IMG/VR virus record: IMGVR_UViG_3300005613_000002
Coordinates: 124,001-188,000 of that record
Strand: one strand, 5' to 3'
Length of the DNA stretch: 64,000 nt
The notes beneath the pieces are model-generated. The model was not told where the DNA came from. It saw only the letters and a program-made list of their open reading frames with translations, and made no database searches. Positions 2,557 to 35,616 of this stretch are shown here, piece after piece (position 1 is the first letter of the stretch; each line of letters starts with the position of its first letter). The position numbers and the translations under genes are program-made.

Positions 2557-2599
2557 TTTGCATTTAATGTAACATTTTATACCTTTGTACCGTATTTAG
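2557..2599 (+). promoter_or_regulatory. Composite promoter of tRNA operon 1 (Bacteroidetes TTTG-N19-TAnnTTTG overlapping TGTAAC-N17-CGTA)
   Basis: TTTG 2557-2560, TACCTTTG 2580-2587, TGTAAC 2568-2573, CGTA 2591-2594; near-identical to 22438-22480. Confidence 0.65.
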
Positions 2600-2649
2600 A
2601 TTAAAGCACTATAAAAATGTGCAATTAAAAATTAATGATAAAAATAAAA

Positions 2650-2766
2650 ATGATGAAAAACTTGATGAACATATTAGCAATTGTAGTGATGTTGGATGCT
2701 GTCCTATTATGGGATGATGCGGAAGAATTATGTAATGTCGGGTTTAAATCTAAAACAGGTGTATAA
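2650..2766 (+). CDS. Leader peptide 1 (MMKNLMNILAIVVMLDAVLLWDDAEELCNVGFKSKTGV), putative attenuator
   Basis: 38-codon ORF between promoter and terminator; contains TCGGGTTT (2738-2745), complementary to the terminator 5' arm. Confidence 0.8.
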   Translation: MMKNLMNILAIVVMLDAVLLWDDAEELCNVGFKSKTGV

Positions 2767-2786
2767 ATAATACCTATAAGATAAAT

Positions 2787-2821
2787 AAAAAACCCGATTT
2801 AGAAATGAATCGGGTTTTTTT
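2787..2821 (+). terminator. Attenuator terminator 1
   Basis: AAAAAACCCGATT / AATCGGGTTTTTTT hairpin with U-tract. Confidence 0.85.
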
Positions 2822-2859
2822 GTGTTTAAAATTGTTGTTCTTTGAAATGTTGGGAATTT

Positions 2860-2936
2860 AGTGCGTTAGTTCAGTTGGTTAGAATATCGGTCTGTCACAC
2901 CGAAGGTCGTGGGTTCGAGTCCCATACGCACTGCCA
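2860..2936 (+). tRNA. tRNA-Asp(GTC)
   Basis: Cloverleaf, anticodon loop CT-GTC-AC, encoded CCA. Confidence 0.9.
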
Positions 2937-2950
2937 AAGGTTAGTAATAT

Positions 2951-3049
2951 TGACGATTAACCATCTGATGTATGATGTTTCCTTAATGAAATTGAAAGGT
3001 GGACGCTCTTGTGGTGAGAAGTGGTCTCTATGATAAAGTAATTGAAAAC
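2951..3049 (+). repeat. ~100-nt repeat copy 1 (putative ncRNA)
   Basis: Near-identical to 3450-3548. Confidence 0.8.
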
Positions 3050-3056
3050 AAATTAT

Positions 3057-3128
3057 CGACTGCGTAGTATAATGGCTAGTATGTCGCACTGTCTATGCGA
3101 AGGAGGGGTTCGAATCCCACGTGGTCGG
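3057..3128 (+). tRNA. tRNA-Asp(GTC), possible 8/4 fold
   Basis: TCGCA-CT-GTC-TA-TGCGA arm, GGTTCGAATCC T arm. Confidence 0.8.
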
Positions 3129-3360
3129 CTGGAGGTCGTTTTTTGTACCTTTTACTGTTATTGCAGTAAAAAGTACTATATAATGGTACAATACTGTGAT
3201 TTTGATAGTATTTTACTGTTATTGCAGTAAAAATAACAAGATATAGTGCATTATAATGTGATTTGTCTGGATATTCCAGAAGTAAACGCATTATTTTACA
3301 CAAATATTGATTAAAGGTGCAAGATAATGCACTTTACGTCTGGAGATTCCAGATAATAAT

Positions 3361-3431
3361 GGCGCATTCGTCTAGTGGCAGGACATAAGACCTTCAATCT
3401 TATCGCAGGGGTTCGATTCCCCTATGCGCTA
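3361..3431 (+). tRNA. tRNA-Glu(TTC)
   Basis: TAAGA-CC-TTC-AA-TCTTA anticodon arm. Confidence 0.85.
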
Positions 3432-3449
3432 CTAGAGGTTAGCAGCAAT

Positions 3450-3548
3450 GACGATTAACCATCTGATTTGTGAGGTTTCCTTGATGAAATTGAAAGGTGG
3501 ACGCTCTTGTGGTGAGAAGTGGTCTCCATGATTGAGTAATTGAAAACA
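3450..3548 (+). repeat. ~100-nt repeat copy 2 (putative ncRNA)
   Basis: Near-identical to 2951-3049. Confidence 0.8.
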
Positions 3549-3553
3549 TAAAT

Positions 3554-3628
3554 GGCACGGTAGACCAATTGGCAGAGTCATCAGATTTAAATCCTGTAAT
3601 AGTGTGGGTTCGATTCCCATTCGTGCTA
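3554..3628 (+). tRNA. tRNA-Leu(TAA), short variable loop
   Basis: Cloverleaf, loop TT-TAA-AT; lacks the long variable arm. Confidence 0.7.
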
Positions 3629-3630
3629 CG

Positions 3631-3716
3631 ATTAAATTGCAATTAATTCTTAACAGGTTCGATTCCTGCTCGTCATGATTAATTACTTGATGGGATGGTG
3701 TAATGTGGTATAACAC
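3631..3716 (+). ncRNA. Circularly permuted tRNA-like element
   Basis: Order is anticodon arm, T arm (CAGG-TTCGATT-CCTG), 3' acceptor CTCGTCA, linker, 5' acceptor TGATGGG, D arm GTGT..ACAC. Confidence 0.5.
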
Positions 3717-3721
3717 AAAAT

Positions 3722-3793
3722 GTTCGGGTCTTCTAACGGCTAGGAAGCAGGGTTTTCATCCCTGTAATCGGGGTTCGATTCCCCGTCCGAATA
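3722..3793 (+). tRNA. tRNA-Glu(TTC)
   Basis: CAGGG-TT-TTC-AT-CCCTG arm. Confidence 0.9.
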
Positions 3794-3969
3794 CAAAGTA
3801 GATTAATAATCTGTCGTAGGTTCTACATGGGTGCGCACCCTACTACGACACCATTTTACCAATTAATTTAGGTGATTAACCTAATAAAATAATACATTAA
3901 CTATTATTTAATATTTAAAATAGGTTTTATAACATGTTTTACCCTATTTATCATTTCAAATTAAATTAT

Positions 3970-4143
3970 ATGAAAAAAATGAAAAGAATTTTAATAGGAA
4001 TTTTACTTACATTAATTGTTATTATGTGTATGGGAATGTTTATAACTTCAATTAATAATTATGAAAATGATGATTCATTAATTGAGATAGAAAAACCTTT
4101 AATGGTTGAAGATTGGATGTTAGATGAAAACTACTTTAATTAA
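3970..4143 (+). CDS. Small protein with N-terminal signal or TM segment
   Basis: MKKMKRILIGILLTLIVIM hydrophobic N-terminus. Confidence 0.5.
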   Translation: MKKMKRILIGILLTLIVIMCMGMFITSINNYENDDSLIEIEKPLMVEDWMLDENYFN

Positions 4144-4247
4144 ATTAGTAGTTTTGGGATTCAATTTCATACGAAGACAAAATGTGGATTATTTTCCACT
4201 TTGTTAAATATTTTCAACAAAGTTTGAGTATTTATAATAAAAAGAAA

Positions 4248-4775
4248 ATGAAAAAATGTTTAATTTATGGTTTATATTGTCCTTTTTTAGATGAACCACA
4301 TTATATTGGGAAAAGTAGTACATCAATGGTTAGACCATTATCACATTTAAATAAATCACATTCTAATGAAATAAATGAATGGGTGAGACAATTAAAATTT
4401 TTAGGTTATAAACCAATTATTAAAATTCTTGAAGAATGTAATATTAATAATGTTGATGAAAAAGAATTATTTTGGATTAAAAAAATATCTAATAATGGTT
4501 ATTATTTATTAAATAAATCACATAATAAAATTGATTTTATTTTAAATAAAAAGGAATATAAATTCAATGATGACGATATTTTAAATGTTGCGGATATGAT
4601 TAAACAAAAAAGAAAAGAATTAAATTACACTCAACTAGATGTCTCAAATTTATGTGGAATCAATAGAAGTACATATATTGAAATTGAAAAAGGCAGTAAA
4701 AAAACTACGTATGGTAATTTAAAAAAAGTTTTAAATGTTTTAGGTTATAAAATAAAAATTGAAAAAAATGAATAG
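4248..4775 (+). CDS. GIY-YIG endonuclease fused to an XRE HTH domain
   Basis: LIYGL..YIGKS..R motif; C-terminal KQKRKELNYTQLDVSNLCGINRSTYIEIEKG; start refined to the ATG after GTATTTAT. Confidence 0.75.
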   Translation: MKKCLIYGLYCPFLDEPHYIGKSSTSMVRPLSHLNKSHSNEINEWVRQLKFLGYKPIIKILEECNINNVDEKELFWIKKISNNGYYLLNKSHNKIDFILNKKEYKFNDDDILNVADMIKQKRKELNYTQLDVSNLCGINRSTYIEIEKGSKKTTYGNLKKVLNVLGYKIKIEKNE

Positions 4776-5073
4776 AATAATTTTATTACCTAAAATTATT
4801 TCTAAATTAGAAATAATGGGTGAAAATATTAAATTAGCAAGATTACGAAGAAAGTTATCTGTTGAACAAGTTTGTGAAAGAGCAAACATATTAAATGAAA
4901 CATTAGTTAATATAGAAAATGGTTCTCCAAATGTTTTATTTGGTCATTATGTTTCAGTGCTTATTACACTTAATCTTGTTAATGATATATATAATATTGC
5001 TAATGATGATATATTAGGTAGAAAATTACAAGATATTGAATTATTAAATAATTCCAAAAATTCACCAAATTAG
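4768..5073 (+). CDS. XRE-family HTH protein (HipB-like)
   Basis: GENIKLARLRRKLSVEQVCERA...DDILGRKLQD resembles HipA-associated XRE regulators. Confidence 0.7.
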   Translation: MNRIILLPKIISKLEIMGENIKLARLRRKLSVEQVCERANILNETLVNIENGSPNVLFGHYVSVLITLNLVNDIYNIANDDILGRKLQDIELLNNSKNSPN

Positions 5074-5093
5074 GAGATTTCTGGCAAATTTTT

Positions 5094-5167
5094 GCTCCCT
5101 TAATTCAGTGGTTCAGAAATCCTGTTTTACAAGCAGGAAGTCGCTGGTTCGAATCCAGCAGGGAGCA
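5094..5167 (+). tRNA. tRNA-Val(TAC)
   Basis: CCTGT-TT-TAC-AA-GCAGG arm. Confidence 0.9.
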
Positions 5168-5416
5168 CAATTATTGGTAAATAAACCGATAAAGTATATT
5201 TATTGGTAAATAAACCGATAAACATCATCATTGATTCATAGGATTTAGTATATTTGTTATATGAATATAGGGATTCCATATGAATTAATTAAAATCTACA
5301 ATAATGATGGTATTGACTTGATGATATATCAACCAATAAGATTTATAGATTCATTTGATTATAGTTATCATCATGATTTTTATACTGTTGATAGATTTAT
5401 TTATCGAGCATTTTAA

Positions 5417-5497
5417 CCTCAAGTGGTGGAACAGGTAGACACGTATGCCTAAGAAGCATATGCCATTGGCGTGTGGGTTCGACTCCCACCTTGAGGA
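5417..5497 (+). tRNA. tRNA-Leu(AAG)
   Basis: TATGC-CT-AAG-AA-GCATA arm; Leu-type D loop and long variable arm. Confidence 0.8.
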
Positions 5498-5503
5498 CAA
5501 TAT

Positions 5504-5584
5504 GCGGAAGTGACATTAAAGCGAATGGTAGAGTGACTAGCCTTAGAAGCTAGGGTTTTGTGGGTTCGACTCCCACCTTCCGTA
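5504..5584 (+). tRNA. tRNA-Leu(TAG), short variable loop
   Basis: CTAGC-CT-TAG-AA-GCTAG arm; enlarged D loop. Confidence 0.75.
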
Positions 5585-5602
5585 CAAAAATTAATAAAAA
5601 AT

Positions 5603-5628
5603 TGTAACAATTTAAATATATTTACGTA
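5603..5628 (+). promoter_or_regulatory. ECF-type promoter TGTAAC-N16-CGTA
   Basis: One of 12 copies in the window. Confidence 0.65.
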
Positions 5629-5751
5629 TATTTAAAAAAATTGTCGAAATGCGAGTGAATGTTATTTTTCTTATTTAGCTATATAGATAAATAAATAGTA
5701 CCAGCAGTAGCCATTGATGTACAGGTGGTGTGTAGTAAAGTAAACAATTAT

Positions 5752-5825
5752 GGGGCAGTAGCTTAGATGGATAAAGCATCTGATTTGCATTCAGAAGACC
5801 GTGGGTTCGAGTCCCATCTGCTCCA
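5752..5825 (+). tRNA. tRNA-Ala(TGC)
   Basis: TCTGA-TT-TGC-AT-TCAGA arm; G3:U70. Confidence 0.9.
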
Positions 5826-5983
5826 CAAAAAGAGGATTACTAGGATAAGCTATGGCAGTGACCTTATTGTAATGAGTAAAAAACATAAGGTAGTTACCCT
5901 TAATATCCTTCCTCTTTTACCTAATTATCATCGGAAGGTGATATTCGCATCAGAATAAAGTTCGAACATAAAACTGATGTGTT

Positions 5984-6056
5984 TCCGACATAGCGCAGTT
6001 GGTTAGCGTACTCCCGTTAGAGGGAGGGGTCACTGGTTCGAGTCCAGTTGTCGGTA
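5984..6056 (+). tRNA. Atypical tRNA with 6-nt anticodon loop (GTTAGA), identity uncertain
   Basis: Good acceptor, D and T arms; CTCCC/GGGAG stem closes only 6 nt. Confidence 0.6.
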
Positions 6057-6171
6057 CAGGAGGGGTAGTTTATAAGGATTCCTATTGATACGGATGAAAA
6101 CTCAACATGGTGACGTTAGTAGAATGAATGAAACCAGTAGTAAATCTACATACGCTATAAAACTAACAAAT

Positions 6172-6243
6172 GGGGCATTAGCTCAGTGGCTAGAGTACTA
6201 CGCTTGCACCGTAGAGACAAGAGTTCGATTCTCTTATGCTCCA
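6172..6243 (+). tRNA. tRNA-Ala(TGC)
   Basis: CTACG-CT-TGC-AC-CGTAG arm; G3:U70. Confidence 0.9.
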
Positions 6244-6382
6244 CTAATCCATGAAATAAGGCAGGTAATATGAAATCCTGTGATAATAGGGTAACGTGTC
6301 TGTCAATGTTGAGAGATAAAACAGGTATTCCCTGTCACGTCCTATTATCGATTACATAAGTATTTATGTTAAATATAAATTT

Positions 6383-6865
6383 ATGGATTATTTACTTATT
6401 TTATTTATCATTTTAGTTACTATTTTTGTAACATATATTTCAACAATTATTTTAAAGTATGGTGTATTACCATCAGTTTCTGATAGTTATTATCATTTAC
6501 CCAAAAAATATAATTTTTTATTTACATTATTTTGTTGGAGTTTCGCTATACCTACATTAATTATTGGTGTTGAATTAACTGATAATTTTTTAATGTTTCT
6601 TGCTGGTGCTGGTATTTGTTTTGTAGGTGCTGCTGCACAATTTAAAGAAGAATTAACAAAACAAGTACATACATATAGTGCATGGGTTGGTGTAATAAGT
6701 AGTCAATTATCAATTATATTTGATTTTAAAATGTATTATGTATCAATACTTTTTTTATTACCATCATTATTATTAATGATATTAAAACCAAAAAATTATA
6801 CATTTTGGATTGAAATAATTGCATTTTCATTAATTTGTTATGTTTTAGGTGTTAATATATTATAA
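6383..6865 (+). CDS. Multi-pass membrane protein
   Basis: About five hydrophobic segments; SVSDSYY motif. Confidence 0.6.
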   Translation: MDYLLILFIILVTIFVTYISTIILKYGVLPSVSDSYYHLPKKYNFLFTLFCWSFAIPTLIIGVELTDNFLMFLAGAGICFVGAAAQFKEELTKQVHTYSAWVGVISSQLSIIFDFKMYYVSILFLLPSLLLMILKPKNYTFWIEIIAFSLICYVLGVNIL

Positions 6866-6866
6866 T

Positions 6867-6949
6867 ACGCAAGTTGCCGAGTGGTTAAAGGCGATGGTCT
6901 CCAAAACCATTCTCGAAAGAGTTCGTGGGTTCGAATCCTACCTTGCGTG
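6867..6949 (+). tRNA. tRNA-Trp(CCA) with long variable arm
   Basis: ATGGT-CT-CCA-AA-ACCAT arm; CTC-GAAA-GAG variable arm; G73. Confidence 0.8.
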
Positions 6950-7050
6950 CAAAAATTACCTGATATTACCAGATAGAAATAACTAACTGTTTAATATCAG
7001 GTAGTTACCATTTATTCTATTGCCAGATATTGCCAGATAGTAGAATTATT

Positions 7051-7076
7051 TGTAACATTTATTTGTTTTATGCGTA
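7051..7076 (+). promoter_or_regulatory. ECF-type promoter TGTAAC-N16-CGTA
   Basis: Motif copy upstream of the 7106 ORF. Confidence 0.65.
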
Positions 7077-7105
7077 TATTATAGTAAATTTGAAAAAAAT
7101 TAAAC

Positions 7106-7834
7106 ATGTATATTATTTCGAAAAATAAAGACTATTATGATGGTGTTGCTGGCTCAACAGGAATTGATAAAACAATTGTTTATGAGAGATATCCTGTTGA
7201 AATTGATAATCAAATCAAAATGCCTAAAATATTTCATCATAAAAATACTTGGCAATATAGATATGATAATCAATTTTTAAATATTAGATATTCTGAACTT
7301 GATTCGAAGAAATCGAAAAAATATAATAATGTACATAGTTTTATTGTTGGATTTTGTGGAAAACTTTATTTAGGTTGGAAATTTCATTATACAGTAAAAG
7401 CTGATAGATTAGGTTTGGAGAAAATTAAAACTGATATTGTTTATGGTTATGATAATGCGAAAAAATATCTTAGAGAAAAACACTGGAAACATAATTTAGA
7501 AGATGATGTTAACTTCATTAAAAGTTATGACCCAATTAATATTTTTAGAGAAATTAATGCCCCTGTTTTCATTTATGATAATGAATCAAATTTAAATTTT
7601 AGTAATAATGGACAGTTACTTAATTATGGATTATTAATAATTAATCCATTATTAAAAGACTATGAATTTTATAAAGTAGTAGATACTTTTCAAGCATTTC
7701 AAGAAATTCAAATGTTTTTGGGCGGTGTGTTAGGTAGAGGTGAAAAAGAGATTATTCAAGTAGCTGATAAATATAAAATTGAACAACACGGTTTTGATAA
7801 ATGGAGTTTTAGAAAAGAACCAAAAAGCAAATAA
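7106..7834 (+). CDS. Hypothetical phage protein
   Basis: 242 aa ORF; KDYYDG, VGFCGK and HGFDK motifs. Confidence 0.6.
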   Translation: MYIISKNKDYYDGVAGSTGIDKTIVYERYPVEIDNQIKMPKIFHHKNTWQYRYDNQFLNIRYSELDSKKSKKYNNVHSFIVGFCGKLYLGWKFHYTVKADRLGLEKIKTDIVYGYDNAKKYLREKHWKHNLEDDVNFIKSYDPINIFREINAPVFIYDNESNLNFSNNGQLLNYGLLIINPLLKDYEFYKVVDTFQAFQEIQMFLGGVLGRGEKEIIQVADKYKIEQHGFDKWSFRKEPKSK

Positions 7835-8006
7835 AATGGAAATATTAATCAAATTAGATGAAGTATTGGAAAAATGTAATGATTGGGAATCATTTTGTAA
7901 AAAAAGAGGTTATTCCGAATATTGTGTTAATGAAGGTGGTGGTGATATTGAAATATTTCTCTCAGAGAATGATGCAAAAGAATTTGGAATAATAAAAAAA
8001 TAAATT

Positions 8007-8366
8007 GGGGCAGCACGGTTTTGACAGCGTGTATGAGTGATAATGTAAGCAAGTAGTAGTTGAATTAATCTACTTTAAAAGGATTCAAAACTATAAATGT
8101 AGAAGACATTATGTCTATCCAAACTTCTGTAACAAGAGGTGAAAGCGTATTTGCAAGAAATACTGAACTTGCAATTGCAGCATAGGAAACAAGAAAACAG
8201 TAGAACCATCTGATGATGTTACGATTTGTGTGATTACGTTAACACCTTAGATGAAAAACTCCACAGCAATCATACTATTTTTGGAAGGTTAGAAAACTTT
8301 ATCCTAAACTTGTAGAAATCTTATTAATCACATGTTTGGACAGGGGTTCGATTCCCCTCTGCTCCA
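8007..8366 (+). ncRNA. ssrA: tmRNA
   Basis: 5' GGGGCAG..TTTGAC and 3' GGGGTTCGATTCCCCTCTGCTCCA tRNA-like domain; tag frame 8099-8185 ending ELAIAA-TAG. Confidence 0.9.
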
Positions 8367-8544
8367 CTAAAATAATTATTATGAGTAATAAAAAAATTAA
8401 TAACATTAAAGAAAGTCTTGAATATCTTAAAAAGAATAAAACAGTTTCAACAAAACAACTATTTGATGATATTGAGACTGAAACAATTTATGATTTAAAA
8501 GCAATGGGATATATTGGTTTTGGTAAAAATAAACATTAAGGTAT

Positions 8545-8629
8545 GCCGAAGTGGTGGAATTGGTAGACACGCCAGATTTAAGCTCTGGTGAGCATTATGC
8601 TCGTGTGGGTTCGAGTCCCATCTTCGGTA
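8545..8629 (+). tRNA. tRNA-Leu(TAA)
   Basis: CCAGA-TT-TAA-GC-TCTGG arm; long variable arm. Confidence 0.9.
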
Positions 8630-8905
8630 CAAAATTTAATAAAAATGAAAGCATACGGATTAAATAAAAAATTTAGGTTTAATTATCCAGATAATCATCC
8701 ACCAAAAGGATGGGTTAATTGGTGGGAAACAGAAATGGGTAGTGTTAATAAAGGGAGAGCCAGACAAGAAGCTAAACGTAATTTAAGAAAGGAGATTAAT
8801 GGTGAAAACGACTAAAAAAGATAATGATTGTGGTTGTGGTAAACCATTAAAAATTAATGACAAAAGAAAGAAGAAGTTTATTAAAAAGAAAAAGAGAAAA
8901 AATAT

Positions 8906-9624: not shown

Positions 9625-9629
9625 TTTAT

Positions 9630-9702: not shown

Positions 9703-9717
9703 CAATTAATCCCAACA

Positions 9718-29338: not shown

Positions 29339-29725
29339 ATGGATGATAAAAAAGAATTTAATATTGATGAAACCAGAAATCTTGATGAATGTGTGGATTG
29401 GGTAAAATGTTATATGTGTTCAGGCGAAAATGGTGATGATGAATTAAAAGAATGGTTAAAATTAGATGAAGATGATGCTATGATGATTCATCATGGTTTT
29501 GGTACTATTATTAGAAACATACTAAAACTTTGGGATGGCGGTCCTGCCGTTCAATGGTTTAACAAACAAGGAATTTATCATGCTGATGATATGTCTGCAA
29601 TTATATTTGCTTCATTACATAGAAAAGAAAATGGTGTTGAAATTGAATTAAATAAACAAATTAAAGTTTATAGGGATTATTGGGATAATGAAGACCCAAA
29701 TATAAATAAAGGAATAATTAACTAA
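29339..29725 (+). CDS. DUF6794-like protein
   Basis: HHGFGTIIRN..LW..GIYHADDMS. Confidence 0.6.
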   Translation: MDDKKEFNIDETRNLDECVDWVKCYMCSGENGDDELKEWLKLDEDDAMMIHHGFGTIIRNILKLWDGGPAVQWFNKQGIYHADDMSAIIFASLHRKENGVEIELNKQIKVYRDYWDNEDPNINKGIIN

Positions 29726-29731
29726 TTAAAT

Positions 29732-29807
29732 GCGAGATTAGCTCAATTGGTAGAGTACGACCTTGCCAAGGTCGGGGTTGTGGGTTCGAACCCCATATCT
29801 CGCTCCA
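29732..29807 (+). tRNA. tRNA-Gly(GCC)
   Basis: CGACC-TT-GCC-AA-GGTCG arm; encoded CCA. Confidence 0.92.
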
Positions 29808-29835
29808 TAAATAATTTTAATTAAAAATAATTAAT

Positions 29836-30351
29836 ATGAAAGACGGAAACAAGTCAGGCAAAAATGCTCCTGAACAATCTAAAGAAAAAGAAGGTGTTAT
29901 TTCACCAGATGGTATTTTAACTAACGAAGATTATAATCTTGATCTAAAAGAAAGGTTGGAATCTAAAAGGAATTCTGAAATAATTAAGTTTAATGAATTA
30001 ATGAAATTAGCACCAGAATTTGCTAAATGGTTAAAAAATTTAGTAAGATATGGTAATGTTGATTCACAAGCCATGATTTATAAAACTCAATTAGATAATA
30101 AAAAAGAGAACAATTTCAGTGTAATTATTTACACTAATGACCATTCTTATTCATTTTATGGTTTTGCACCAACAGATGAAAAACCAAAAGGATATTTAGG
30201 TGGTGGTGGTAATACTAGAAAACCAAGAGTTGGTGAAGATTGGAATCGAGGAAATGATTTACCTGATGGTTCATATTCTAAAAAAACATTTGATGCAATA
30301 GTGTATCGAATTGTTGCATATGAATTAAAAAATTTACAACTTTGGAGATAA
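29836..30351 (+). CDS. Hypothetical phage protein
   Basis: 171 aa; RKPRVGEDWNRGNDLPDG. Confidence 0.55.
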   Translation: MKDGNKSGKNAPEQSKEKEGVISPDGILTNEDYNLDLKERLESKRNSEIIKFNELMKLAPEFAKWLKNLVRYGNVDSQAMIYKTQLDNKKENNFSVIIYTNDHSYSFYGFAPTDEKPKGYLGGGGNTRKPRVGEDWNRGNDLPDGSYSKKTFDAIVYRIVAYELKNLQLWR

Positions 30352-30619
30352 TTTGTAACATTTTTAAATAAATTACGTATAGGTTATTATATATTTATTA
30401 AATGAATTCAAAAGCAGAGATCAAAAGAATAAGACACTTAGCTGAAACACGTAATAATGGTGTTTATAGAGAAGTGGGAATTAAAAATAAATTTAGTTTA
30501 TCTTATTTATGTAATTATATTTGGCATAAACCTACCCCAATTACAGAATAAGATAAAATAATTAATGGCAACCGAGTAAACGTTAGCTTTACAGAAGAAC
30601 GGAGATTAATTATTAATGA

Positions 30620-30992
30620 AAAAAATAATACAGAGGATTTATCGCTACATGGACACTATCATGGACATAATGTCCATGACTATGTAGAGGAACTTCAGGA
30701 CACCATTGCTAGACGCAGGAGATAGTAAGTTAAAGCTGTTAGGTTAATCACCTTCGGGAGTTTATATTTTAAAAAAGGTTAGTAGTGAATATAAACGTAT
30801 GAATTAAACAAACCAGTAACCTTGAAAGACCCGATAACTATCGTTCGTACTGCGGAGGGTGCAAGCTAAACAGACTTAGAGGGAAAGCAACTTAATTATA
30901 GTCGGGTTAGTGCACTCCGAAAGGAGCATATCATAAGATATGAGATAAATGATAAAATAAAACAAAATTCTGGGTACGCTCATATTATTTTT
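30620..30992 (+). ncRNA. rnpB: RNase P RNA
   Basis: CR-I-like GAGGAACTTCAGGACACC, GCAAG, AGATAAATGAT and CR-V-like ACAAAATTCTGGGTA; terminal P1/P2 complementarity. Confidence 0.8.
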
Positions 30993-31480
30993 TATAGTAA
31001 AATTTTTAAAAATACGTATAATAATTACAATTAATTTATTACTTTTGTGTTTATAAATCATTAAACAAGAACAAAATGATAAAAAGAAATGTATTAATTG
31101 AAAAATTAAATTCTTGGAAAGCAAGAGAAAACGGAGTAAGTATTCATTTGTTAAAGTTAATCAGTCTTGTTGCTGATGGTGATAATGAAGAATATTCTCC
31201 ATTAGATGAAATAAAGCTAGTGTGTGATAATAGAAACAATACACCTGAAATAGTTGGTTTCACTATGGAATTTATTGATGATGTTTTAAAAAATAATAAA
31301 TAAAATAAAAATGGTTAAAAAATATGGATTCATTATTATGATAATTATTGGATTAATTTTAATTTACAGTAATATGTTCTATACTGAATCTAATTTTAAT
31401 TTAATTTTATGGGGAATTGGAATACTAATTACTTTTATTGGTGTTTTATTTTTTTCATTTTCAAAAATAATAAAAATATT

Positions 31481-32341
31481 ATGATATCAAACAGAGCAAA
31501 ACGAATAGGTTTAAAAGAATTAGAAATTTTTGATAATTTTTTTATTGATAAAACATTACCTAAATTTAAGATGGAATCCACTAATAATAAGGCAGATATG
31601 GGTGGGGTTTCATGGTCAACACCATCTGAAGGTGGTGTTACTGATAGTGGGAATTGGGAAAATGATTCTGGTGGGTTTTCGTTTAGAAGAAAGTTAATTT
31701 CGTTGTTATCTCCAAAAGATAAAAAACCGAAACAACCGAAAAGAACATTAACTACTCTTGAATTATTTACTGCATTATCAAAATCATATAAAGAATTATC
31801 AAAAATTGGTGAGGTTGCTGAACATTACGAAAAAGCACTTATTCAAGCAAAAACATTAGGTCAAACAGCATTGTTTGATAAATTAAAAGATTTAGTTGAT
31901 GTAGTTAAAGGTGAAGCAATATTAATTGCAATGGGTTTAACCAAATATGTGACTGAAAAACAAATTGTTGATTTTTATGGGTTAGTTGGTGAGGATAAAA
32001 ATTTAAAGTTGACATGGATTAAAAACTTCAATAGAATAATTCCTGAAGATATTTACGAAGTTAAAAAAGATGTTGATGGACGTAAAATATTTGATAATTA
32101 CGTTATTCTTCATTATGACCCAGAAAATAATGGCGAAGAATTAACAAAACAAGAATTAGAAGATAAAAAAGACCCAATATTATTCGGTTTGATTAAAGAT
32201 AGTAAAAAACTTTATTATGTTGCTGATTGGAAAGATGATTATTGTGATTTAACTCTTGAAGAAATGTTTAATGAATTAGGTGAGAAAACATTAAAAATTA
32301 ATAACAGAAACGTAAAAACATTCATTGATAAAATTAAATAA
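31481..32341 (+). CDS. Hypothetical phage protein
   Basis: Long ORF with KDPILFG..YYVADWKDDYCDLT; start uncertain. Confidence 0.55.
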   Translation: MISNRAKRIGLKELEIFDNFFIDKTLPKFKMESTNNKADMGGVSWSTPSEGGVTDSGNWENDSGGFSFRRKLISLLSPKDKKPKQPKRTLTTLELFTALSKSYKELSKIGEVAEHYEKALIQAKTLGQTALFDKLKDLVDVVKGEAILIAMGLTKYVTEKQIVDFYGLVGEDKNLKLTWIKNFNRIIPEDIYEVKKDVDGRKIFDNYVILHYDPENNGEELTKQELEDKKDPILFGLIKDSKKLYYVADWKDDYCDLTLEEMFNELGEKTLKINNRNVKTFIDKIK

Positions 32342-32709
32342 TGAAAGAAAACATTAATAATATTGCAGAAAAAATGTCAAGACTAAACGCTGTTGAACTT
32401 AGTGAGTTATCAAGTGTTTTATTATCTAAATATAATATGAGTGCAACAATTTATCATTTTGGTGTTGTACCAACAATAGAGAATCCTAATAATAATAATA
32501 AATGTGATTTAGTATTATTAGAATGTGGTCAAAGAAAATTAATGATTGTTAAATCAATTAAAGAAATTTTCGGATTAGGTCTTAAAGAAGCAAAAGATAT
32601 TATAGACACAGTACCAACCTATCTTAGTAAATCAATATCAATTGTAAAAGCAGAAAAAATTAAATTAGTGTTAGAGGAAATTGGTGCTAAAGTTGAAATT
32701 AATTATTAA
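32341..32709 (+). CDS. rplL: Ribosomal protein bL12 (L7/L12) homologue
   Basis: LNAVELSELS N-domain; KLMIVKSIKEIFGLGLKEAKDIID..P..AEKIKLVLEEIGAKVEI C-domain. Confidence 0.8.
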   Translation: MKENINNIAEKMSRLNAVELSELSSVLLSKYNMSATIYHFGVVPTIENPNNNNKCDLVLLECGQRKLMIVKSIKEIFGLGLKEAKDIIDTVPTYLSKSISIVKAEKIKLVLEEIGAKVEINY

Positions 32710-32936
32710 TGGAAAATAACATTGATGTTTGTACTGCTTGTGGGAAATGTTGCAATAAACATTGGCTAGTTAAATTAACTAGTCAGCACGAAATTGATAT
32801 GTTTGGTGATGATGTTGTTGATGGTGGTTTTATTTGGACAGATACTTGTAAGTTTCATATTGATAATAAATGTTCAATCCATGATGATAAACCATATAAA
32901 TGTAAACAATATTTTTGTGAAGGTAATTTAAAATAA
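32709..32936 (+). CDS. YkgJ-like CxxCxxCC cysteine-cluster protein
   Basis: CTACGKCC..C..CSIHDDKPYKC. Confidence 0.7.
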   Translation: MENNIDVCTACGKCCNKHWLVKLTSQHEIDMFGDDVVDGGFIWTDTCKFHIDNKCSIHDDKPYKCKQYFCEGNLK

Positions 32937-33191
32937 TTTTTATGTCTATAATTAGTGAAGGAATTGCTGAACAAACAGCAAATAAATTAGAGAGAATAAT
33001 TCTAACTGCTATAAATAATAGAAAGTATGGCGACCATAGGAGTTCTGTTAGAGATTTTGTTAATAATGAACTTGTTGAATGGTACTATTCAGAATGTGAT
33101 GAAACATTTGGAATGAGTAAACCAAATCCTGAAATATTGAAAATGTTTCCACGAAAAAAATAAATATCGGAAGGTTGGTAGTGTGAATATT

Positions 33192-33276
33192 GGTGAGATA
33201 CTCAAATGGTAAAGAGGATAGTTTGCTAAACTATTAGGCTGTAACAGGTGCGTGGGTTCGAATCCCACTCTCACCG
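33192..33276 (+). tRNA. tRNA-Ser(GCT)
   Basis: ATAGT-TT-GCT-AA-ACTAT arm; long variable arm; G73. Confidence 0.9.
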
Positions 33277-33935
33277 CATTTTATGTTTATTATTTTTTGA
33301 ATAATATTTAAAAATTTAATTGATGTTTGTTCTTTAAAATATTTTTGCATTGATGTATCAATTATACACAATTCTATATCTTGCTCAATACACGCTTGAA
33401 ACTTACGATTATCATTATTTTGAATTTGGTTTAATTTATCAGAACCAAAGATTGGTTCATAATGAAATATACCATTAAGTTCAAACGCAAGTTTCAATGA
33501 TGGAATATAAATATCGAGTTCAGAATTAATAGCATCTTTATGATTGAAATTAAACTCAATGGTTGGATATAATATAGTTAGTTTAGATTCTAACCATTTT
33601 TCTAATTTAGATACACGAGTCCCATGTTTTTTATGGGTATTATTGTATGTTGCTGCACAAGATTTAGAACAGAAGTTATTTTTTGTTCTTAATATTTGTG
33701 ATGGAATTTTAGTAAATTTATTACCACAATTAATACAATGCACTTCAATTTTTGTTTGCATTGATGTATTACATTTTTGAGAACAAAACATACATTTGTC
33801 TTTTCCACCATTTAAGTGAGAAATAATCTGTCTTTTTTCAACGAAAAAAATTGATTGACAAGTATAACATTCACATGATAATTTATCACCAATCTTAGCA
33901 GTATTCAATTCATCGTCAGTAAATAATGGTTTCAT
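33234..33935 (-). CDS. Zn-finger + PD-(D/E)XK (Vsr/DUF559-like) homing endonuclease
   Basis: Repeated CxxC..FCSxxC; ELDIYIPSLKLAFELNGIFHY. Confidence 0.75.
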   Translation of the reverse strand: MKPLFTDDELNTAKIGDKLSCECYTCQSIFFVEKRQIISHLNGGKDKCMFCSQKCNTSMQTKIEVHCINCGNKFTKIPSQILRTKNNFCSKSCAATYNNTHKKHGTRVSKLEKWLESKLTILYPTIEFNFNHKDAINSELDIYIPSLKLAFELNGIFHYEPIFGSDKLNQIQNNDNRKFQACIEQDIELCIIDTSMQKYFKEQTSIKFLNIIQKIINIKCGESGIRTHAPVTA

Positions 33936-35543
33936 ATTATAATTTTAAGATAAATACTTCGAAAAACTTTTTTCGAATCCCTTACCTTCCTCATTAAATT
34001 TACCAACATTATTTGTTAAGGGTTATAAAATATGATTGTTTTATAACCCTTTTTTCTTTATATTTGTATATATGAAAGAAAGAAAAGCAATAACACTTCT
34101 TGATGAAGATACTGCAACCACATTTTTAAGACCATATTCAGATGAACATAGAAATTGTTTAATTGTTGTCACTGAAGATGCATATGGTGAATTTACTGGA
34201 GTTTTAACACCAATAAAAAAGATTAAGGGTAATTTAAACATTACTGATGAAGAAATTGATGAAATGATATTTAAATTGCGTTAAAATGGAGCAGATAAGA
34301 GAAAGAGTATTAGGAATTATTGAGAAATATAATTTAAAACCGATTGAACTTCCAAAGGAACATAAAGATGTTTACTCATTCATTAATGAGAATCAAGAAA
34401 GAGAAAAAGATTTCAAACCTGAAATTTCAGATAATGAATTAGGTGTAAAATATGCGAGACATATCCCAAGGGGTTGGTATGGTTTTGATATTGGTATTCC
34501 AATTGTTCCAGATTGGATGAAAATTATTAGTGAAATCACTGAATTATGTGTTAGCATTGACCCAAAATTTGAAATTCGTCAAGTTAAATTAAAATATGGT
34601 AGAATATGTTATTATGCAAGTAGTTTTATAATTGAAGATGCTGATGAACTTGATGATATTTTAAATGATAAACTATATGATAAAGCATTAGTTTATTAGT
34701 AGATCATATGAAATGAATAATTTTGAATTATTAAAACGCACATATCCAATTTCACAATATGAAAGACTTTGTGATGGTTATGAGTATATTTTAAAATATA
34801 CGACACAGAAAGAGAGAAAAGCATTTGGTGAATTACAAAGAACAATTAAAGAAGGTGAGAAATATATTTATCAAGTAGCTAAAGAAGGTAAGGAATTTAA
34901 AACAATGTGTATGTGTTTTACAAATTACAGTATAATAAGAAAACAAATATTTAAATTAGAAGACGATTAAATAATAATTTATGGATAAAAAAATAGTTTA
35001 CGTTATTGGATTTTTTTTAGGTTTCGAATATTCTACACATCATATACCAGTTAAAATAATAAAAAGAAAGAAAAATAATCACATTAACAATCATTATAAT
35101 GGGTCTAATAAAAACAATAATAAAACAAAAACTAAAATAAGGAGTTTTAATAGAAATTCAAAAGTTAATTTTATTTAATCATTTTTGTAACAATTTTTTC
35201 GAATATTCGTATAATTAAAAAACAATATATTATGAATAATGATATTACAATAAATATTGAAGATATTCGAAAATTACCTAATGGTTCTATTACAAATATT
35301 GAAACAATTAGACAAATAGCATTAACAAACGACATTTCATTATTCGATAAGATAGATGATAGATTTATGTTCGCAGGTACTTACCCTGTACTAATGAAAA
35401 TTCATAATATTTTACCAAATAAATCATTTGATATAGTGGGAGAAAAATGTAATTGTGAAACTAAAGGTAGAACTGTTTGGAGTGTATCATCAGATGGAAA
35501 GTGTTTAAGATGTGGAAAACAATATGTTAAATAATAAAATAGT

Positions 35544-35616
35544 GCTCCTGTGGCTGAATGGTTAAAGCAATGGACTCTAAATCCATTTTTTGCAGGTTCG
35601 AATCCTGTCAGGAGCG
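35544..35616 (+). tRNA. Amber suppressor tRNA (CTA)
   Basis: ATGGA-CT-CTA-AA-TCCAT arm; GCTCCTG/CAGGAGC acceptor; G73. Confidence 0.88.

What the first reader, a model, noticed from the sequence alone, without database searches (positions are those of the whole stretch)
2557..35616. Three leader-peptide attenuators whose codons match their downstream tRNA clusters: a tRNA-depletion sensor for phage tRNA operons
Seen in sequence: all three tRNA clusters start with the same layout of promoter, short ORF, an in-ORF segment complementary to the terminator 5' arm, intrinsic terminator and a boxA-like GTTC/ATTTGAAA element. Leader 1 (2650) is rich in D/E/L/V/A/W/M and cluster 1 encodes those tRNAs. 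Leader 2 (13004) is Y/K-rich and cluster 2 holds only Tyr and Lys tRNAs. Leader 3 (22532) is R/N/S/I/T/G/F/C-rich and cluster 3 encodes those. Established: ribosome stalling on leader codons drives attenuation of amino-acid biosynthesis operons, and host defences cleave tRNAs (PrrC and PARIS target Lys, retron Ec78 PtuAB targets Tyr). Inference: the phage uses attenuation to supply the tRNA subset that the host has depleted or cleaved. I am not aware of this being described for tRNA operons. No His, Gln or Pro tRNAs occur here, which predicts a fourth H/Q/P leader and cluster elsewhere in the genome.
Basis: partly seen in the sequence, partly recalled or inferred. Interest (0 to 1): 0.97.

Follow-up and report, generated by a model that had tools for sequence, protein, structure and literature searches.

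The report
Codon-sensing attenuators of phage tRNA operons
In this giant phage, each group of tRNA genes sits behind a tiny translated "test" gene written in the codons those same tRNAs read, followed by a transcription stop signal; this layout should switch the tRNA genes on when those tRNAs run short, a kind of control I could not find described for tRNA genes.

Summary
All three units have a conserved promoter, a short ORF, an in-ORF segment complementary to the terminator's 5' arm, a strong intrinsic terminator and then tRNA genes.

- **Codon match.** Leader residues match the downstream tRNA set at 23/37, 9/25 and 36/44, against backgrounds of 0.34, 0.16 and 0.46.
- **Fourth unit.** The predicted His/Gln/Pro leader and Pro-His-Gln cluster lie about 1.5 kb upstream of the window, in the same contig.
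- **Relatives.** 71 non-redundant leaders from more than 100 metagenomic relatives fall into the same four classes. The antiterminator covaries with the terminator. Cognate codons are enriched only in the ATG frame.
- **Other lineages.** Other huge phages, including the 735-kb LR756501, group their tRNAs differently, and their leaders track those groupings. Permutation gave 0 of 200,000.
- **Box.** The "boxA-like" box is identical to an element just upstream of 23S rRNA in Bacteroidota rRNA operons.
- **RNA.** Sludge metatranscriptome contigs cover a relative's tRNA cluster, and one spans leader, terminator and tRNA.

Best reading: classical ribosome-mediated attenuation applied to tRNA operons, giving negative feedback on decoding capacity. 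A host-defence trigger is plausible but untested. I found no prior description in seven literature searches.

The parts
2552..2598 (+). Promoter of unit 1: A-tract, TTTG (2557-2560), TACCTTTG (2580-2587), CGTATTTA (2591-2598). Bacteroidota-type -33/-7 layout.
   Evidence: The same ~50-nt motif sits upstream of DEVLAW and CISNFGTR leaders in relatives. The -33/-7 consensus is from my own knowledge.
2650..2766 (+). Leader ORF 1 (38 codons; an in-frame ATG also at 2635). Sensor codons rich in Leu/Val/Ala/Met/Asp/Glu/Trp, core ..LLWDDAEEL..
   Evidence: Ten non-redundant homologues keep the core.
2736..2746 (+). Antiterminator segment of unit 1 (TGTCGGGTTTA). Pairs with the terminator 5' arm.
   Evidence: RNAduplex -13.2 kcal/mol, z -3.9. 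It is the MFE helix of the partial transcript.
2788..2826 (+). Intrinsic terminator of unit 1 (14-bp stem, T-run).
2836..2858 (+). boxA-like box of unit 1 (TGTTCTTTGAAATGTTGGGAATT), directly before the first tRNA.
   Evidence: The consensus form is identical to the Bacteroidota rrn spacer element.
2860..9703 (+). tRNA operon 1: Asp x2, Glu x2, Leu x5 (including 5984-6057, read by eye as Leu-UAG), Val, Ala x2, Trp, Met, plus tmRNA 8007-8367 and small ORFs.
12906..12957 (+). Promoter of unit 2 (CGTATTTA 12936-12943, TATATTTG 12949-12956).
   Evidence: The YK promoters of relatives share GTAAC-N16-CGTATTTAT-N6-TATATTTG.
13004..13084 (+). Leader ORF 2 (26 codons), sensor core YYGYKSYKK. Contains a small hairpin (about 13036-13060) over the Tyr/Lys codons.
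13060..13067 (+). Antiterminator segment of unit 2 (TATCGGGA).
   Evidence: In 48 aligned YK leaders the helix is 95.3% paired, with 4 of 8 pairs showing compensatory change.
13120..13152 (+). Intrinsic terminator of unit 2.
13366..13977 (+). tRNA operon 2: a tRNA-like gene with an expanded anticodon loop (13366-13450), then Tyr, Lys, Tyr, Lys.
22433..22479 (+). Promoter of unit 3 (TTTG 22438-22441, TACCTTTG 22461-22468, CGTATTTA 22472-22479).
22532..22669 (+). Leader ORF 3 (45 codons). Sensor rich in Arg/Asn/Ser/Ile/Thr/Gly/Phe/Cys, core ..ISRNGNGIFCSIFGRN..
22635..22645 (+). Antiterminator segment of unit 3 (ACGAGTCTTTA).
   Evidence: RNAduplex -12.9 kcal/mol, z -4.2.
22693..22731 (+). Intrinsic terminator of unit 3.
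22729..22750 (+). boxA-like box of unit 3 (GTTCATTGACGTGTTGGTAAAT, a diverged copy).
22751..33277 (+). tRNA operon 3: Cys, Ile x2, Ser x2, Asn x2, Phe x2, Gly x2, Thr x2, Met, Arg x3 and odd tRNAs, interspersed with HNH/GIY-YIG and other ORFs. A strong terminator at 34018-34051 probably ends it.
11768..12856 (+). Rnl1-like RNA ligase gene immediately upstream of the Lys/Tyr unit. This position is conserved in relatives. Context only, not part of the attenuator.

Best explanation
Each unit is a ribosome-mediated (leader-peptide) transcription attenuator placed in front of a tRNA operon.

**Proposed sequence of events**
1. Transcription starts at a conserved Bacteroidota-type promoter.
2. A ribosome translates the short leader, whose codons are the ones read by the tRNAs encoded downstream.
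3. If those codons are decoded quickly, the ribosome runs over or past the antiterminator segment to the stop codon, about 26 nt before the terminator. The terminator hairpin forms and transcription ends.
4. If any of those codons is decoded slowly, the ribosome stalls upstream. Slow decoding would follow if the cognate charged tRNA is scarce for any reason: phage codon demand, decay of host tRNA, or cleavage by a defence nuclease.
5. The antiterminator then pairs with the terminator's 5' arm and RNA polymerase reads on.
6. Readthrough transcripts pass an rRNA-operon-type boxA element, which probably recruits the host antitermination factors. They then make the tRNAs that relieve the stall.

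The result is negative feedback on decoding capacity, run separately for four amino-acid groups that together cover all 20 amino acids.

**Shown:** the anatomy, its conservation, covariation, frame-specific codon enrichment, leader-to-tRNA tracking across lineages, and co-occurrence of leader and tRNA on one sequence in RNA libraries.

**Inferred:** leader translation, stalling-dependent readthrough, and boxA function.
For: **Anatomy in the window**
- All elements are present in all three units.
- Leader residues match the unit's own tRNA set at P=3e-4, 0.011 and 1e-6, and the 3x3 matrix is diagonal.
- The match also holds at the codon-to-anticodon level.

**Fourth unit, same contig**
- L211 8285-8368 has the core QHQPVQHPQ, a terminator at 8399-8435, and then Pro, His, Pro, Pro, His, Gln, Gln from 8442.

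**Relatives**
- 71 non-redundant leaders. Sensor fraction in the unit's own set against background: HQP 0.41 (0.07), DEVLAW 0.71 (0.35), YK 0.43 (0.15), CISNFGTR 0.82 (0.45). All 71 are classified correctly by composition.
- Cognate codons are enriched only in the ATG frame: 0.71 against 0.20 and 0.16; 0.43 against 0.08 and 0.13; 0.40 against 0.14 and 0.07; 0.82 against 0.33 and 0.47.

**Antiterminator**
- The duplex is 7-9 bp with median -13 kcal/mol. z is -3 or lower in 62 of 70.
- Its sequence changes together with the terminator between classes and lineages. Examples are GAATCGGG with CCCGATTC, GAATGGGG with CCCCATTC, TGGTCGAGA with TCTCGACCA, and TAAGACTGG with CCGGTCTTA.
- On 48 YK leaders the antiterminator is 95% paired with 4 of 8 pairs compensatory. 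The terminator is 94% paired with 6 of 11 compensatory.
- Three YK leaders are frameshifted after the sensor but keep the GGAATCGGG nucleotides, so this is an RNA element and not a peptide one.
- Partial-transcript folds give the antiterminator as the MFE for units 1 and 2. Full transcripts give the terminator.

**Geometry**
- Stop codon to terminator is 20-39 nt, median 26, in every class.
- The first tRNA lies within 30 nt of the terminator in 21 of 70 units and within 60 nt in 36 of 70. In those units there is no room for a separate promoter.

**Other lineages with different groupings**
- LR756501: leader core SKHSKHFSSSSKWF before Trp, His, His, Phe, Lys, Ser; a Leu-rich leader before Leu x5; a Met/Gln/Ile-rich leader before Met, Gln x3, Met x3, Ile.
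- L256, from a 675-kb contig: a Thr/Ala/Pro/Gln/Gly/Arg-rich leader before exactly those tRNAs (P=2e-8). L279 has a Leu/Cys leader. L227 also matches.
- Permutation of leader-to-cluster assignment: 1 of 5040 for 7 units, and 0 of 200,000 for 13 units.

**Box**
- The box matches an element 23-28 nt upstream of 23S rRNA in Bacteroidota rrn operons.

**RNA**
- In three activated-sludge metatranscriptomes, contigs with no mismatches cover only the tRNA cluster of relative L038.
- In a fourth library, one contig runs from the leader ORF through the terminator into tRNA-Tyr.
Against: - There is no experimental evidence of leader translation, stalling or regulated readthrough.
- The RNA evidence is thin. 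It rests on assembled contigs at low depth, from a relative and not from this phage. One library may contain DNA. No RNA run holds the window's own phage.
- Covariation in the YK class rests on few independent lineages, mainly L006 and L045.
- In the YK and CISNFGTR classes the antiterminator ends 12-37 nt before the stop codon. A ribosome paused at the stop would not cover it, so the model there depends on kinetic coupling rather than simple masking.
- Unit 2 of the window has a weak 6-bp antiterminator (-9.5 kcal/mol), a weak box, and 326 nt between the terminator and the first ARAGORN-called tRNA.
- Two candidate units in other lineages (L250, L287) show no significant match.
- An amino-acid shortage would also open the attenuator, although extra tRNA would not help in that case.
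- Whether the polymerase used is the host's is inferred from promoter type only.
Confidence: 0.8

Rival explanations
1. Defence-specific reading. The attenuators exist chiefly to detect cleavage or depletion of particular host tRNAs by anti-phage nucleases and to replace exactly those tRNAs. The hardware is the same as in the best explanation. Only the selective purpose differs.
For: - Lys and Tyr form their own small, separately regulated unit with 2-3 gene copies each.
- That unit sits directly downstream of an Rnl1-like RNA ligase in the window and in about 80 relatives.
- A cyclic-phosphate-processing receiver-domain protein lies nearby.
- A conserved Lys-like tRNA mimic with a disrupted anticodon loop sits in the same unit.
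- PARIS is linked to tRNA-Lys and retron-Eco7 PtuAB to tRNA-Tyr, and phage T5 tRNAs rescue infection (PMC11464382 and PMC11555353, found).
Against: - All 20 amino acids are covered by attenuated operons, not only known nuclease targets.
- Other lineages pool Lys or Tyr with many other tRNAs.
- The sensor cannot tell cleavage from simple excess demand by a 27% G+C genome.
- No defence gene or host is known for these uncultured phages.
Confidence: 0.3
2. Translation-independent tRNA sensing. The leader RNA displays codon triplets that bind tRNA anticodons directly, in the manner of a T-box, and the ORF is incidental.
For: The regulated output concerns tRNA, as in T-box systems. The sensor regions are codon-rich stretches just upstream of an antiterminator/terminator switch.
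Against: - No T-box or other Rfam family matches anywhere in the window.
- An ATG, an open frame and a stop at a fixed 20-39 nt from the terminator are conserved in every class.
- Cognate triplets are enriched only in the ATG frame.
- Up to eight different amino acids are sampled per leader, which a single tRNA-docking fold could not read.
Confidence: 0.04
3. No regulation. The short ORFs are small genes or chance ORFs with their own terminators, and the tRNAs are made from separate promoters or by constitutive leak.
For: - Phage genomes are full of small ORFs.
- In some units 150-450 nt separate the terminator from the first tRNA, which is room for a promoter.
- Repeated motifs follow some YK terminators.
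Against: - The first tRNA is within 30 nt of the terminator in 21 of 70 units, and 6 nt away in the HQP unit of this phage.
- Composition tracks the tRNA set across lineages, with 0 of 200,000 permutations matching.
- The 3' part of the ORF is conserved as nucleotides even when the frame shifts.
- The antiterminator covaries with the terminator.
- One contig spans leader, terminator and tRNA in an RNA library.
Confidence: 0.03
4. Amino-acid starvation sensor. The attenuators report uncharged tRNA caused by amino-acid shortage in the host, as classical attenuators do, and tune phage tRNA synthesis to nutrient state rather than to tRNA abundance.
For: The hardware is that of the trp, his and ilv attenuators, which respond to the charged fraction of a tRNA. 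Multi-amino-acid leaders are known (ilv, thr; from my own knowledge).
Against: - Making more tRNA does not relieve an amino-acid shortage, so the response would be futile.
- The exact match between leader codons and the operon's own products is what a product-feedback loop predicts.
- That match holds even where groupings differ between lineages.
Confidence: 0.08

Closest known systems
Leader-peptide transcription attenuators of amino-acid biosynthesis operons (trpL, hisL, leuL, thrL, ilvL, pheL of Proteobacteria)
   Same: - Promoter, short translated ORF enriched in regulatory codons, mutually exclusive antiterminator and terminator hairpins, and readthrough when the ribosome stalls.
- Multivalent leaders such as ilv (Ile/Leu/Val) and thr (Thr/Ile) also sample several amino acids.
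   Different: - The regulated genes are the tRNAs themselves, not biosynthetic enzymes. The loop therefore feeds back on tRNA supply and not on amino-acid supply.
- Up to eight or nine amino acids are sampled in one leader.
- Four paralogous units partition the whole code.
- The system is phage-encoded and in a Bacteroidota context.
- There is no sequence or structure match to any Rfam leader family.
pheM leader attenuator of the pheST (phenylalanyl-tRNA synthetase) operon of E. coli (from my own knowledge)
   Same: Leader-peptide attenuation controls a component of the translation apparatus in response to decoding of cognate codons.
   Different: It controls a synthetase and a single amino acid, and it is cellular rather than viral.
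T-box riboswitches
   Same: They read tRNA status and switch between terminator and antiterminator to control translation-related genes.
   Different: - A T-box binds uncharged tRNA directly and needs no ribosome.
- T-boxes are typical of Firmicutes and control synthetases and amino-acid genes, not tRNA genes.
- No T-box match was found here, and the codon enrichment is frame-specific.
rRNA-operon boxA antitermination (NusB/S10-dependent)
   Same: - The 21-nt box after the attenuators (GTTCTTTRACRTNTTGRAAAT) is found 23-28 nt upstream of 23S rRNA, after the spacer tRNAs, in Bacteroidota rrn operons.
- It resembles E. coli boxA, TGCTCTTTAACAA (sequence recalled from memory).
   Different: - Here it precedes phage tRNA operons and lies downstream of a regulated terminator.
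- Binding of Nus factors is not tested.
Phage tRNA genes and tRNA repair as counter-defence (T5 tRNAs against PARIS and retron-Eco7; T4 Rnl1/Pnk against PrrC)
   Same: Phage-encoded Lys and Tyr tRNAs, and an Rnl1-like ligase, sit next to each other.
   Different: Those systems supply or repair tRNA. No demand-sensing control of the tRNA genes has been described for them in the papers found (PMC11464382, PMC11555353).

Membership tests
Ribosome-mediated (leader-peptide) transcription attenuator | Short ORF with a start codon between the promoter and the regulated genes | tested here: met
   ORFs 2650-2766, 13004-13084 and 22532-22669, plus L211 8285-8368. ATG and frame are conserved in 71 non-redundant homologues.
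Ribosome-mediated (leader-peptide) transcription attenuator | Regulatory codons enriched in the leader, in frame | tested here: met
   Own-set fractions are 0.41-0.82 against backgrounds of 0.07-0.45. Enrichment is seen only in the ATG frame.
Ribosome-mediated (leader-peptide) transcription attenuator | Intrinsic terminator between the leader and the regulated genes | tested here: met
   Stems of 12-14 bp plus a T-run, -14 to -17 kcal/mol in the window and median -16.1 in 70 units.
Ribosome-mediated (leader-peptide) transcription attenuator | Alternative antiterminator pairing that excludes the terminator, maintained in evolution | tested here: met
   z is -3 or lower in 62 of 70 units. Partner sequences change together between classes.
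Ribosome-mediated (leader-peptide) transcription attenuator | Geometry such that a ribosome stalled on regulatory codons leaves the antiterminator free, and a ribosome that runs on prevents it | tested here: inconclusive
   - Sensor codons end about 10-15 nt before the antiterminator.
- In DEVLAW and HQP the antiterminator overlaps, or lies within 10 nt of, the stop codon.
- In YK and CISNFGTR it ends 12-37 nt before the stop, so kinetic coupling must be assumed.
Ribosome-mediated (leader-peptide) transcription attenuator | Leader is translated, and readthrough rises when cognate charged tRNA is limiting | not testable with these tools
   The only indirect evidence is a contig spanning leader, terminator and tRNA in an RNA library from a relative.
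Classical amino-acid operon leaders (Rfam His_leader, Trp_leader, Leu_leader, Thr_leader, Phe_leader and others) | Match to the family's covariance model, with amino-acid biosynthesis genes downstream | tested here: not met
   The Rfam gathering-threshold scan of the whole window returns only tRNA and tmRNA. The downstream genes are tRNAs.
T-box riboswitch | Conserved T-box sequence and specifier-loop architecture | tested here: not met
   No Rfam T-box hit. Codon enrichment is frame-specific.
rrn-type boxA antitermination element | Sequence shared with the element in the host phylum's rRNA operons, at the corresponding position | tested here: met
   - The pattern occurs between the spacer tRNAs and 23S rRNA in L329, L336 (twice) and L337.
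- Most bacterial hits are Bacteroidota.
- In phages 39 of 94 copies lie within 60 nt upstream of a tRNA.
- The window copies are diverged, about 19 of 21 positions for unit 1.
rrn-type boxA antitermination element | Binds NusB/S10 and makes RNA polymerase termination-resistant | not testable with these tools

The most novel reading that the evidence does not exclude
Huge phages of Bacteroidota run their tRNA genes under a previously unrecognised control principle. "Codon-sampler" leader peptides continuously test, on the ribosome, whether each group of tRNAs is sufficient. They open the matching tRNA operon when any member is limiting. The leader evolves to track whatever tRNAs the operon holds, so a leader can be used to predict an operon's content and the reverse. 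The same circuit would automatically counter tRNA-cleaving defence nucleases.
Probability: 0.72. Interest if true: 0.93.

Novelty: new variant of a known kind. Interest (0 to 1): 0.9.

Why it matters
**A new target for a textbook mechanism.** Leader-peptide attenuation is known for amino-acid biosynthesis genes and one synthetase operon. Here the same hardware appears to regulate tRNA genes themselves, with the leader written in the codons of its own operon's products. That would be a direct feedback loop on decoding capacity.

**It bears on open questions about phage tRNAs.**
- Why large phages carry so many tRNAs.
- Why those tRNAs are grouped as they are.
- How their expression is matched to demand.

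**It gives a way in to uncultured phages.**
- Leader composition predicts operon content.
- The boxA element and promoter type point to a Bacteroidota host.

**It links to current work on defence.** The circuit suggests a built-in, self-adjusting answer to tRNA-targeting defences such as PrrC, PARIS and retron-Eco7.

**It may be useful.** The units are compact sensor parts of about 200 nt that report shortage of chosen tRNAs. They could serve as reporters of tRNA availability.

**It is widespread.** Units appear in sediment, sludge, freshwater and gut-associated phage contigs, including the largest published phage genome.

Tried and rejected
1. **No cultured relatives.** Megablast and blastn against the GenBank phage collection matched only tRNA-sized pieces. 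The RNA ligase is at most 36% identical to any deposited phage.
2. **A badly chosen pattern.** The viral-contig pattern GAATGGGG..CCCCATTC is its own reverse complement, so it also matched unrelated hairpins. It still recovered about 30 true HQP units.
3. **L100 rejected.** It looked like another lineage, but its "leader" overlaps a tRNA-Lys gene in a 60% G+C contig.
4. **A covariation claim dropped.** I first thought L048 and others lacked tRNA-His and might show leader/tRNA co-loss. A relaxed ARAGORN run finds His(GUG) in L048, L184, L204 and L210.
5. **Apparent foreign tRNAs in YK operons are miscalls.**
   - The L018 Leu call is a Lys(UUU) homologue.
   - The L027 Cys call is a Lys-like RNA with an expanded anticodon loop.
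   - The 95-nt Val calls in L021 and L068 are unresolved.
6. **No RNA data for this phage.** No RNA run holds the window's own phage. RNA evidence had to come from relative L038.
7. **The box is not common in the window.** A relaxed form occurs 6 times against 2.2 expected.
8. **16S search found nothing.** Looking for a 16S start near the box in bacterial loci gave no hits. The box lies before 23S instead.
9. **Bacterial tRNA operons not shown to have such units.** The 120 bacterial loci fetched with the box showed none. That sample was not designed to test this.
10. **Literature.** Seven full-text searches and two paper look-ups found no description of leader-peptide attenuation of tRNA genes.

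Full report
**What the window is.** The 64 kb are positions about 124,001-188,000 of the 321,624-bp viral contig IMGVR_UViG_3300005613_000002. G+C is about 27%.

- The window holds 36 tRNA genes, a tmRNA and a CUA suppressor by ARAGORN, plus two further tRNAs by Rfam.
- No deposited phage is closely related.
- The gene context is a translation and RNA-repair island. It holds:
  - a cyclic-phosphate-processing receiver-domain protein;
  - an Rnl1-like RNA ligase;
  - YqeY and ribosomal protein L7/L12;
  - homing endonucleases between the tRNAs;
  - ribonucleotide reductase;
  - a TnpB-like gene.

- Each has an A-tract followed by TTTG, then TAnnTTTG (the Bacteroidota -33/-7 layout, from my own knowledge), then CGTATTTA.
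- The 33-nt promoter core is identical at units 1 and 3, against 0 expected by chance.
- CGTATTTA occurs on the + strand only at the three promoters and one other site.
- Each unit then has an ATG-initiated ORF of 38, 26 or 45 codons, and a 12-14-bp terminator with a T-run.
- These are 3 of only 10 strong + strand terminators in the 64 kb.
- tRNA genes start 42 nt after the terminator in unit 1 and 30 nt after it in unit 3.
- Excluding the initiator Met, leader residues fall in the downstream tRNA set at these rates:

| Unit | Own-set residues | Background | P | Control small ORFs as high (of 359) |
|---|---|---|---|---|
| 1 | 23/37 | 0.34 | 3e-4 | 0 |
| 2 | 9/25 | 0.16 | 0.011 | 5 |
| 3 | 36/44 | 0.46 | 1e-6 | 10 |

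- No leader is enriched for another unit's set.
- By wobble rules the codons are readable by the unit's own anticodons in 19/28, 9/18 and 28/37 sensor codons. Several isoacceptor families are sampled.

**The predicted fourth unit exists.** Fetching the contig upstream of the window shows a complete fourth unit at L211 8285-9459, about 1.5 kb before window position 1.

- It has the same type of promoter.
- The leader core is QHQPVQHPQ.
- An in-ORF GAATGGG pairs with the terminator 5' arm.
- The terminator is at 8399-8435.
- From 8442 follow Pro, His, Pro, Pro, His, Gln, Gln.
- Together the four units cover all 20 amino acids.

**Relatives.** The RNA ligase next to unit 2 served as bait. It gave 8 viral and 80 metagenomic loci with 55-69% protein identity, from sediment, activated sludge and freshwater.

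- The tRNAs fall in the same four groups, in the same order.
- An automatic scan for terminator, preceding ORF and following tRNA recovered the four leader classes. No use was made of composition.
- After removing duplicates there are 71 leaders:

| Class | Own-set fraction in sensor region | Background |
|---|---|---|
| HQP | 0.41 | 0.07 |
| DEVLAW | 0.71 | 0.35 |
| YK | 0.43 | 0.15 |
| CISNFGTR | 0.82 | 0.45 |

- All 71 are assigned to the right class by composition alone.
- The enrichment exists only in the ATG frame. This argues for reading by ribosomes and not for a nucleotide-level bias.
- All classes begin MKNL-like and share the promoter, so the units look like paralogues.

**Alternative RNA structures.** In nearly every leader the best duplex between the ORF region and the terminator's 5' arm is a 7-9-bp helix.

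- Median energy is -13 kcal/mol. z is -3 or lower against shuffles in 62 of 70.
- The partner sequences differ between classes and change together:
  - YK: GAATCGGG with CCCGATTC. In L006 and L045 the terminator is CCCAGTC or CCCGGTC and the ORF segment follows.
  - HQP: GAATGGGG with CCCCATTC.
  - DEVLAW: GTCGGGT with ACCCGAC, but TGGTCGAGA with TCTCGACCA in L064, at the cost of the peptide's C-terminus.
  - Window unit 3: CGAGTCTTT with AAAGACTCG.
- On the 48-sequence YK alignment the counts are as follows, and no shuffle reaches these values:

| Helix | Paired | Compensatory change |
|---|---|---|
| Antiterminator | 95.3% | 4 of 8 pairs |
| Terminator | 94.1% | 6 of 11 pairs |
| Small hairpin over the Tyr/Lys codons | 90.9% | one pair switches GC/AU in 10 sequences |

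- Three YK leaders carry a 1-nt deletion after the sensor. This changes the peptide but keeps GGAATCGGG, so the 3' part is conserved as RNA and the 5' part as codons.
- Folding transcripts that end before the 3' arm gives the antiterminator as the MFE for units 1 and 2. Full transcripts give the terminator.
- The stop codon lies 20-39 nt (median 26) before the terminator in all classes.
- The first tRNA follows within 30 nt in 21 of 70 units.

**Other lineages.** This is the strongest test, because within one family the match could be inherited.

- LR756501 is the 735-kb Mahaphage with a predicted Bacteroidetes host (PMC7162821). It groups its tRNAs differently and has at least three units of the same architecture:
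  - a leader with core SKHSKHFSSSSKWF before Trp, His, His, Phe, Lys, Ser, Lys, Trp, Lys, Lys;
  - a Leu-rich leader before five tRNA-Leu genes;
  - a Met/Gln/Ile-rich leader before Met, Gln x3, Met x3, Ile.
- A scan of viral contigs with the box motif gave further groupings:
  - L256, from a 675-kb contig: a Thr/Ala/Pro/Gln/Gly/Arg-rich leader before T, G, A, Q, P, Q, P, T, R, R, G (27/43, P=2e-8);
  - L279: Leu/Cys;
  - L227: Ser/Leu/Thr/Cys/Pro/Arg/Gln/His;
  - long "sampler" leaders before large mixed operons.
- Permuting leader-to-cluster assignments gives 1 of 5040 for 7 unit types and 0 of 200,000 for 13. Ten of the 13 leaders match their own set best.
- Two candidates, L250 and L287, are not significant.

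- It is present in 10 of 10 DEVLAW units and 7 of 7 CISNFGTR units, in some HQP and YK units, and in LR756501.
- The consensus GTTCTTTRACRTNTTGRAAAT occurs 96 times in viral contigs. Of 94 copies with enough downstream sequence, 39 lie within 60 nt of a tRNA, and most of those within 10 nt.
- In bacterial genomes its hits are overwhelmingly Bacteroidota.
- In L329, L336 and L337 it lies between the spacer tRNAs and 23S rRNA, 23-28 nt before the 23S start.
- That position, and its likeness to E. coli boxA (recalled from memory), support an rrn-type antitermination signal. A role in 23S processing is not excluded.
- It also supports a Bacteroidota host.
- The window's own copies are diverged. 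Unit 2's is weak, and the HQP unit has none.

**RNA evidence.** No RNA run holds the window's phage. Activated-sludge libraries hold relative L038.

- Contigs without mismatches cover 12785-13346, which is the Tyr/Lys cluster and spans several tRNAs, in three metatranscriptomes.
- The flanking ligase gene (12300-12627) and the region 13366-13500 are uncovered in all four runs.
- In the fourth library a 254-nt contig runs from inside the leader ORF (12666), through the terminator (12758-12792), into tRNA-Tyr.
- This fits a polycistronic transcript that starts at the leader.
- It is weak evidence, because these are contigs at low depth with possible DNA carry-over.

**How it most likely works.** Classical ribosome-mediated attenuation, with the operon's own products as the sensed quantity.

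- Fast decoding of the sensor leads to termination.
- A stall on any cognate codon frees the antiterminator and allows readthrough.
- boxA-modified elongation through a 1-11-kb operon then yields more of the limiting tRNAs.
- The logic is OR within a group and independent between groups.

What causes the shortage is open. The candidates are:

- demand from an AT-rich genome;
- loss of host tRNAs during infection;
- cleavage by a defence nuclease.

The Lys/Tyr unit sits beside the RNA ligase and carries a conserved Lys-like tRNA mimic. That fits the known Lys and Tyr nuclease targets (PMC11464382, PMC11555353), but it is circumstantial.

**Comparison and novelty.** It works like the trp, his and ilv attenuators and like pheM-pheST.

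- It is not a member of any Rfam leader family or of the T-box family.
- The regulated genes, the self-referential codon logic, the number of amino acids sampled and the phage setting are all different.
- Seven literature searches and a look at the paper that published LR756501 found no mention of such control.
- That library is incomplete, so prior description cannot be excluded.
- I rate it a new variant of a known kind, of high interest.

Noticed in passing
window 13366-13450 (homologues e.g. L027 5356-5439, L042 6882-6967, L012 4281-4363): A tRNA-like gene with normal acceptor, D and T arms but an anticodon loop of about 20 nt ending ..TCTTTAA (Lys-like). It lies between the Lys/Tyr attenuator and the Tyr/Lys tRNAs and is conserved in at least 9 other YK operons. 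It could be a decoy for an anticodon nuclease or an intron-like insertion.
   Followed up: partly
window 27233-27303; 24144-24271; 5984-6057: Three unusual tRNAs. One has an 8-nt anticodon loop (ARAGORN gives the anticodon as 'cgaa'). One is 128 nt long with an insertion of about 55 nt and was found only by Rfam. One was left unassigned by ARAGORN and reads by eye as Leu(UAG).
   Followed up: partly
window 35544-35617 (also L006 467-552): A tRNA with anticodon CUA (amber suppressor). It hints at TAG recoding in part of the genome. It lies beyond a strong terminator at 34018-34051, so it is probably a separate transcription unit.
   Followed up: no
window 8007-8367: A phage-encoded tmRNA inside the Asp/Glu/Val/Leu/Ala/Trp operon. 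Relative L010 has one in the same place, preceded by a box-like GTTCTTTAAAAAT.
   Followed up: no
window 123-521 and 11768-12856: RNA-repair context. A cREC_REC (cyclic-phosphate-processing receiver) domain protein lies near the window start. An Rnl1-like RNA ligase lies directly upstream of the Lys/Tyr unit, in conserved synteny across about 80 relatives.
   Followed up: partly
window 17835-19133: A TnpB/Cas12f-like (IS605 OrfB) gene between the ribonucleotide reductase gene and a von Willebrand-domain gene.
   Followed up: no
window 32341-32709 and 27676-28074: A ribosomal protein L7/L12 homologue and a YqeY-like protein are encoded among the tRNAs of unit 3.
   Followed up: no
window 9603-9624 (also L018 4730-4753, L022 4738-4760, L054 4984-5008): A conserved hairpin with loop TCAAATGG lies 5-9 nt upstream of tRNA-Met in many relatives. 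Function unknown. It may be a Met-specific control or a processing signal.
   Followed up: no
L010 9150-9300, L013 4540-4600, L026 2980-3040, L041, L046: Direct repeats (TGCATAAAAAC.., GTGAAAAAC..TTAT) lie between the YK terminator and the first tRNA in several relatives. They may be protein-binding sites or extra promoters.
   Followed up: no
L306 248-268, L313 3532-3552, L320 6629-6649 (Bacteroidales genomes): The same 21-nt box also occurs in bacterial loci with no rRNA within 8 kb. There it is flanked by inverted TTGTCGA..TCGACAA repeats. What it precedes there is unknown.
   Followed up: partly
L119 (reverse strand) 5582-5650 and downstream tRNAs at 5726-6388: An HQP-type leader with an Arg codon in its core (..QQPRHLQPQ..) precedes a cluster that begins with two tRNA-Arg genes before Pro, His, Gln, Gln. 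It may be a within-family case of a leader tracking its operon's content, but it is a single example.
   Followed up: partly
window 58001-60000: GC skew flips to -0.32 in this 2-kb bin while the rest of the window is positive. This suggests a short block of opposite-strand genes.
   Followed up: no
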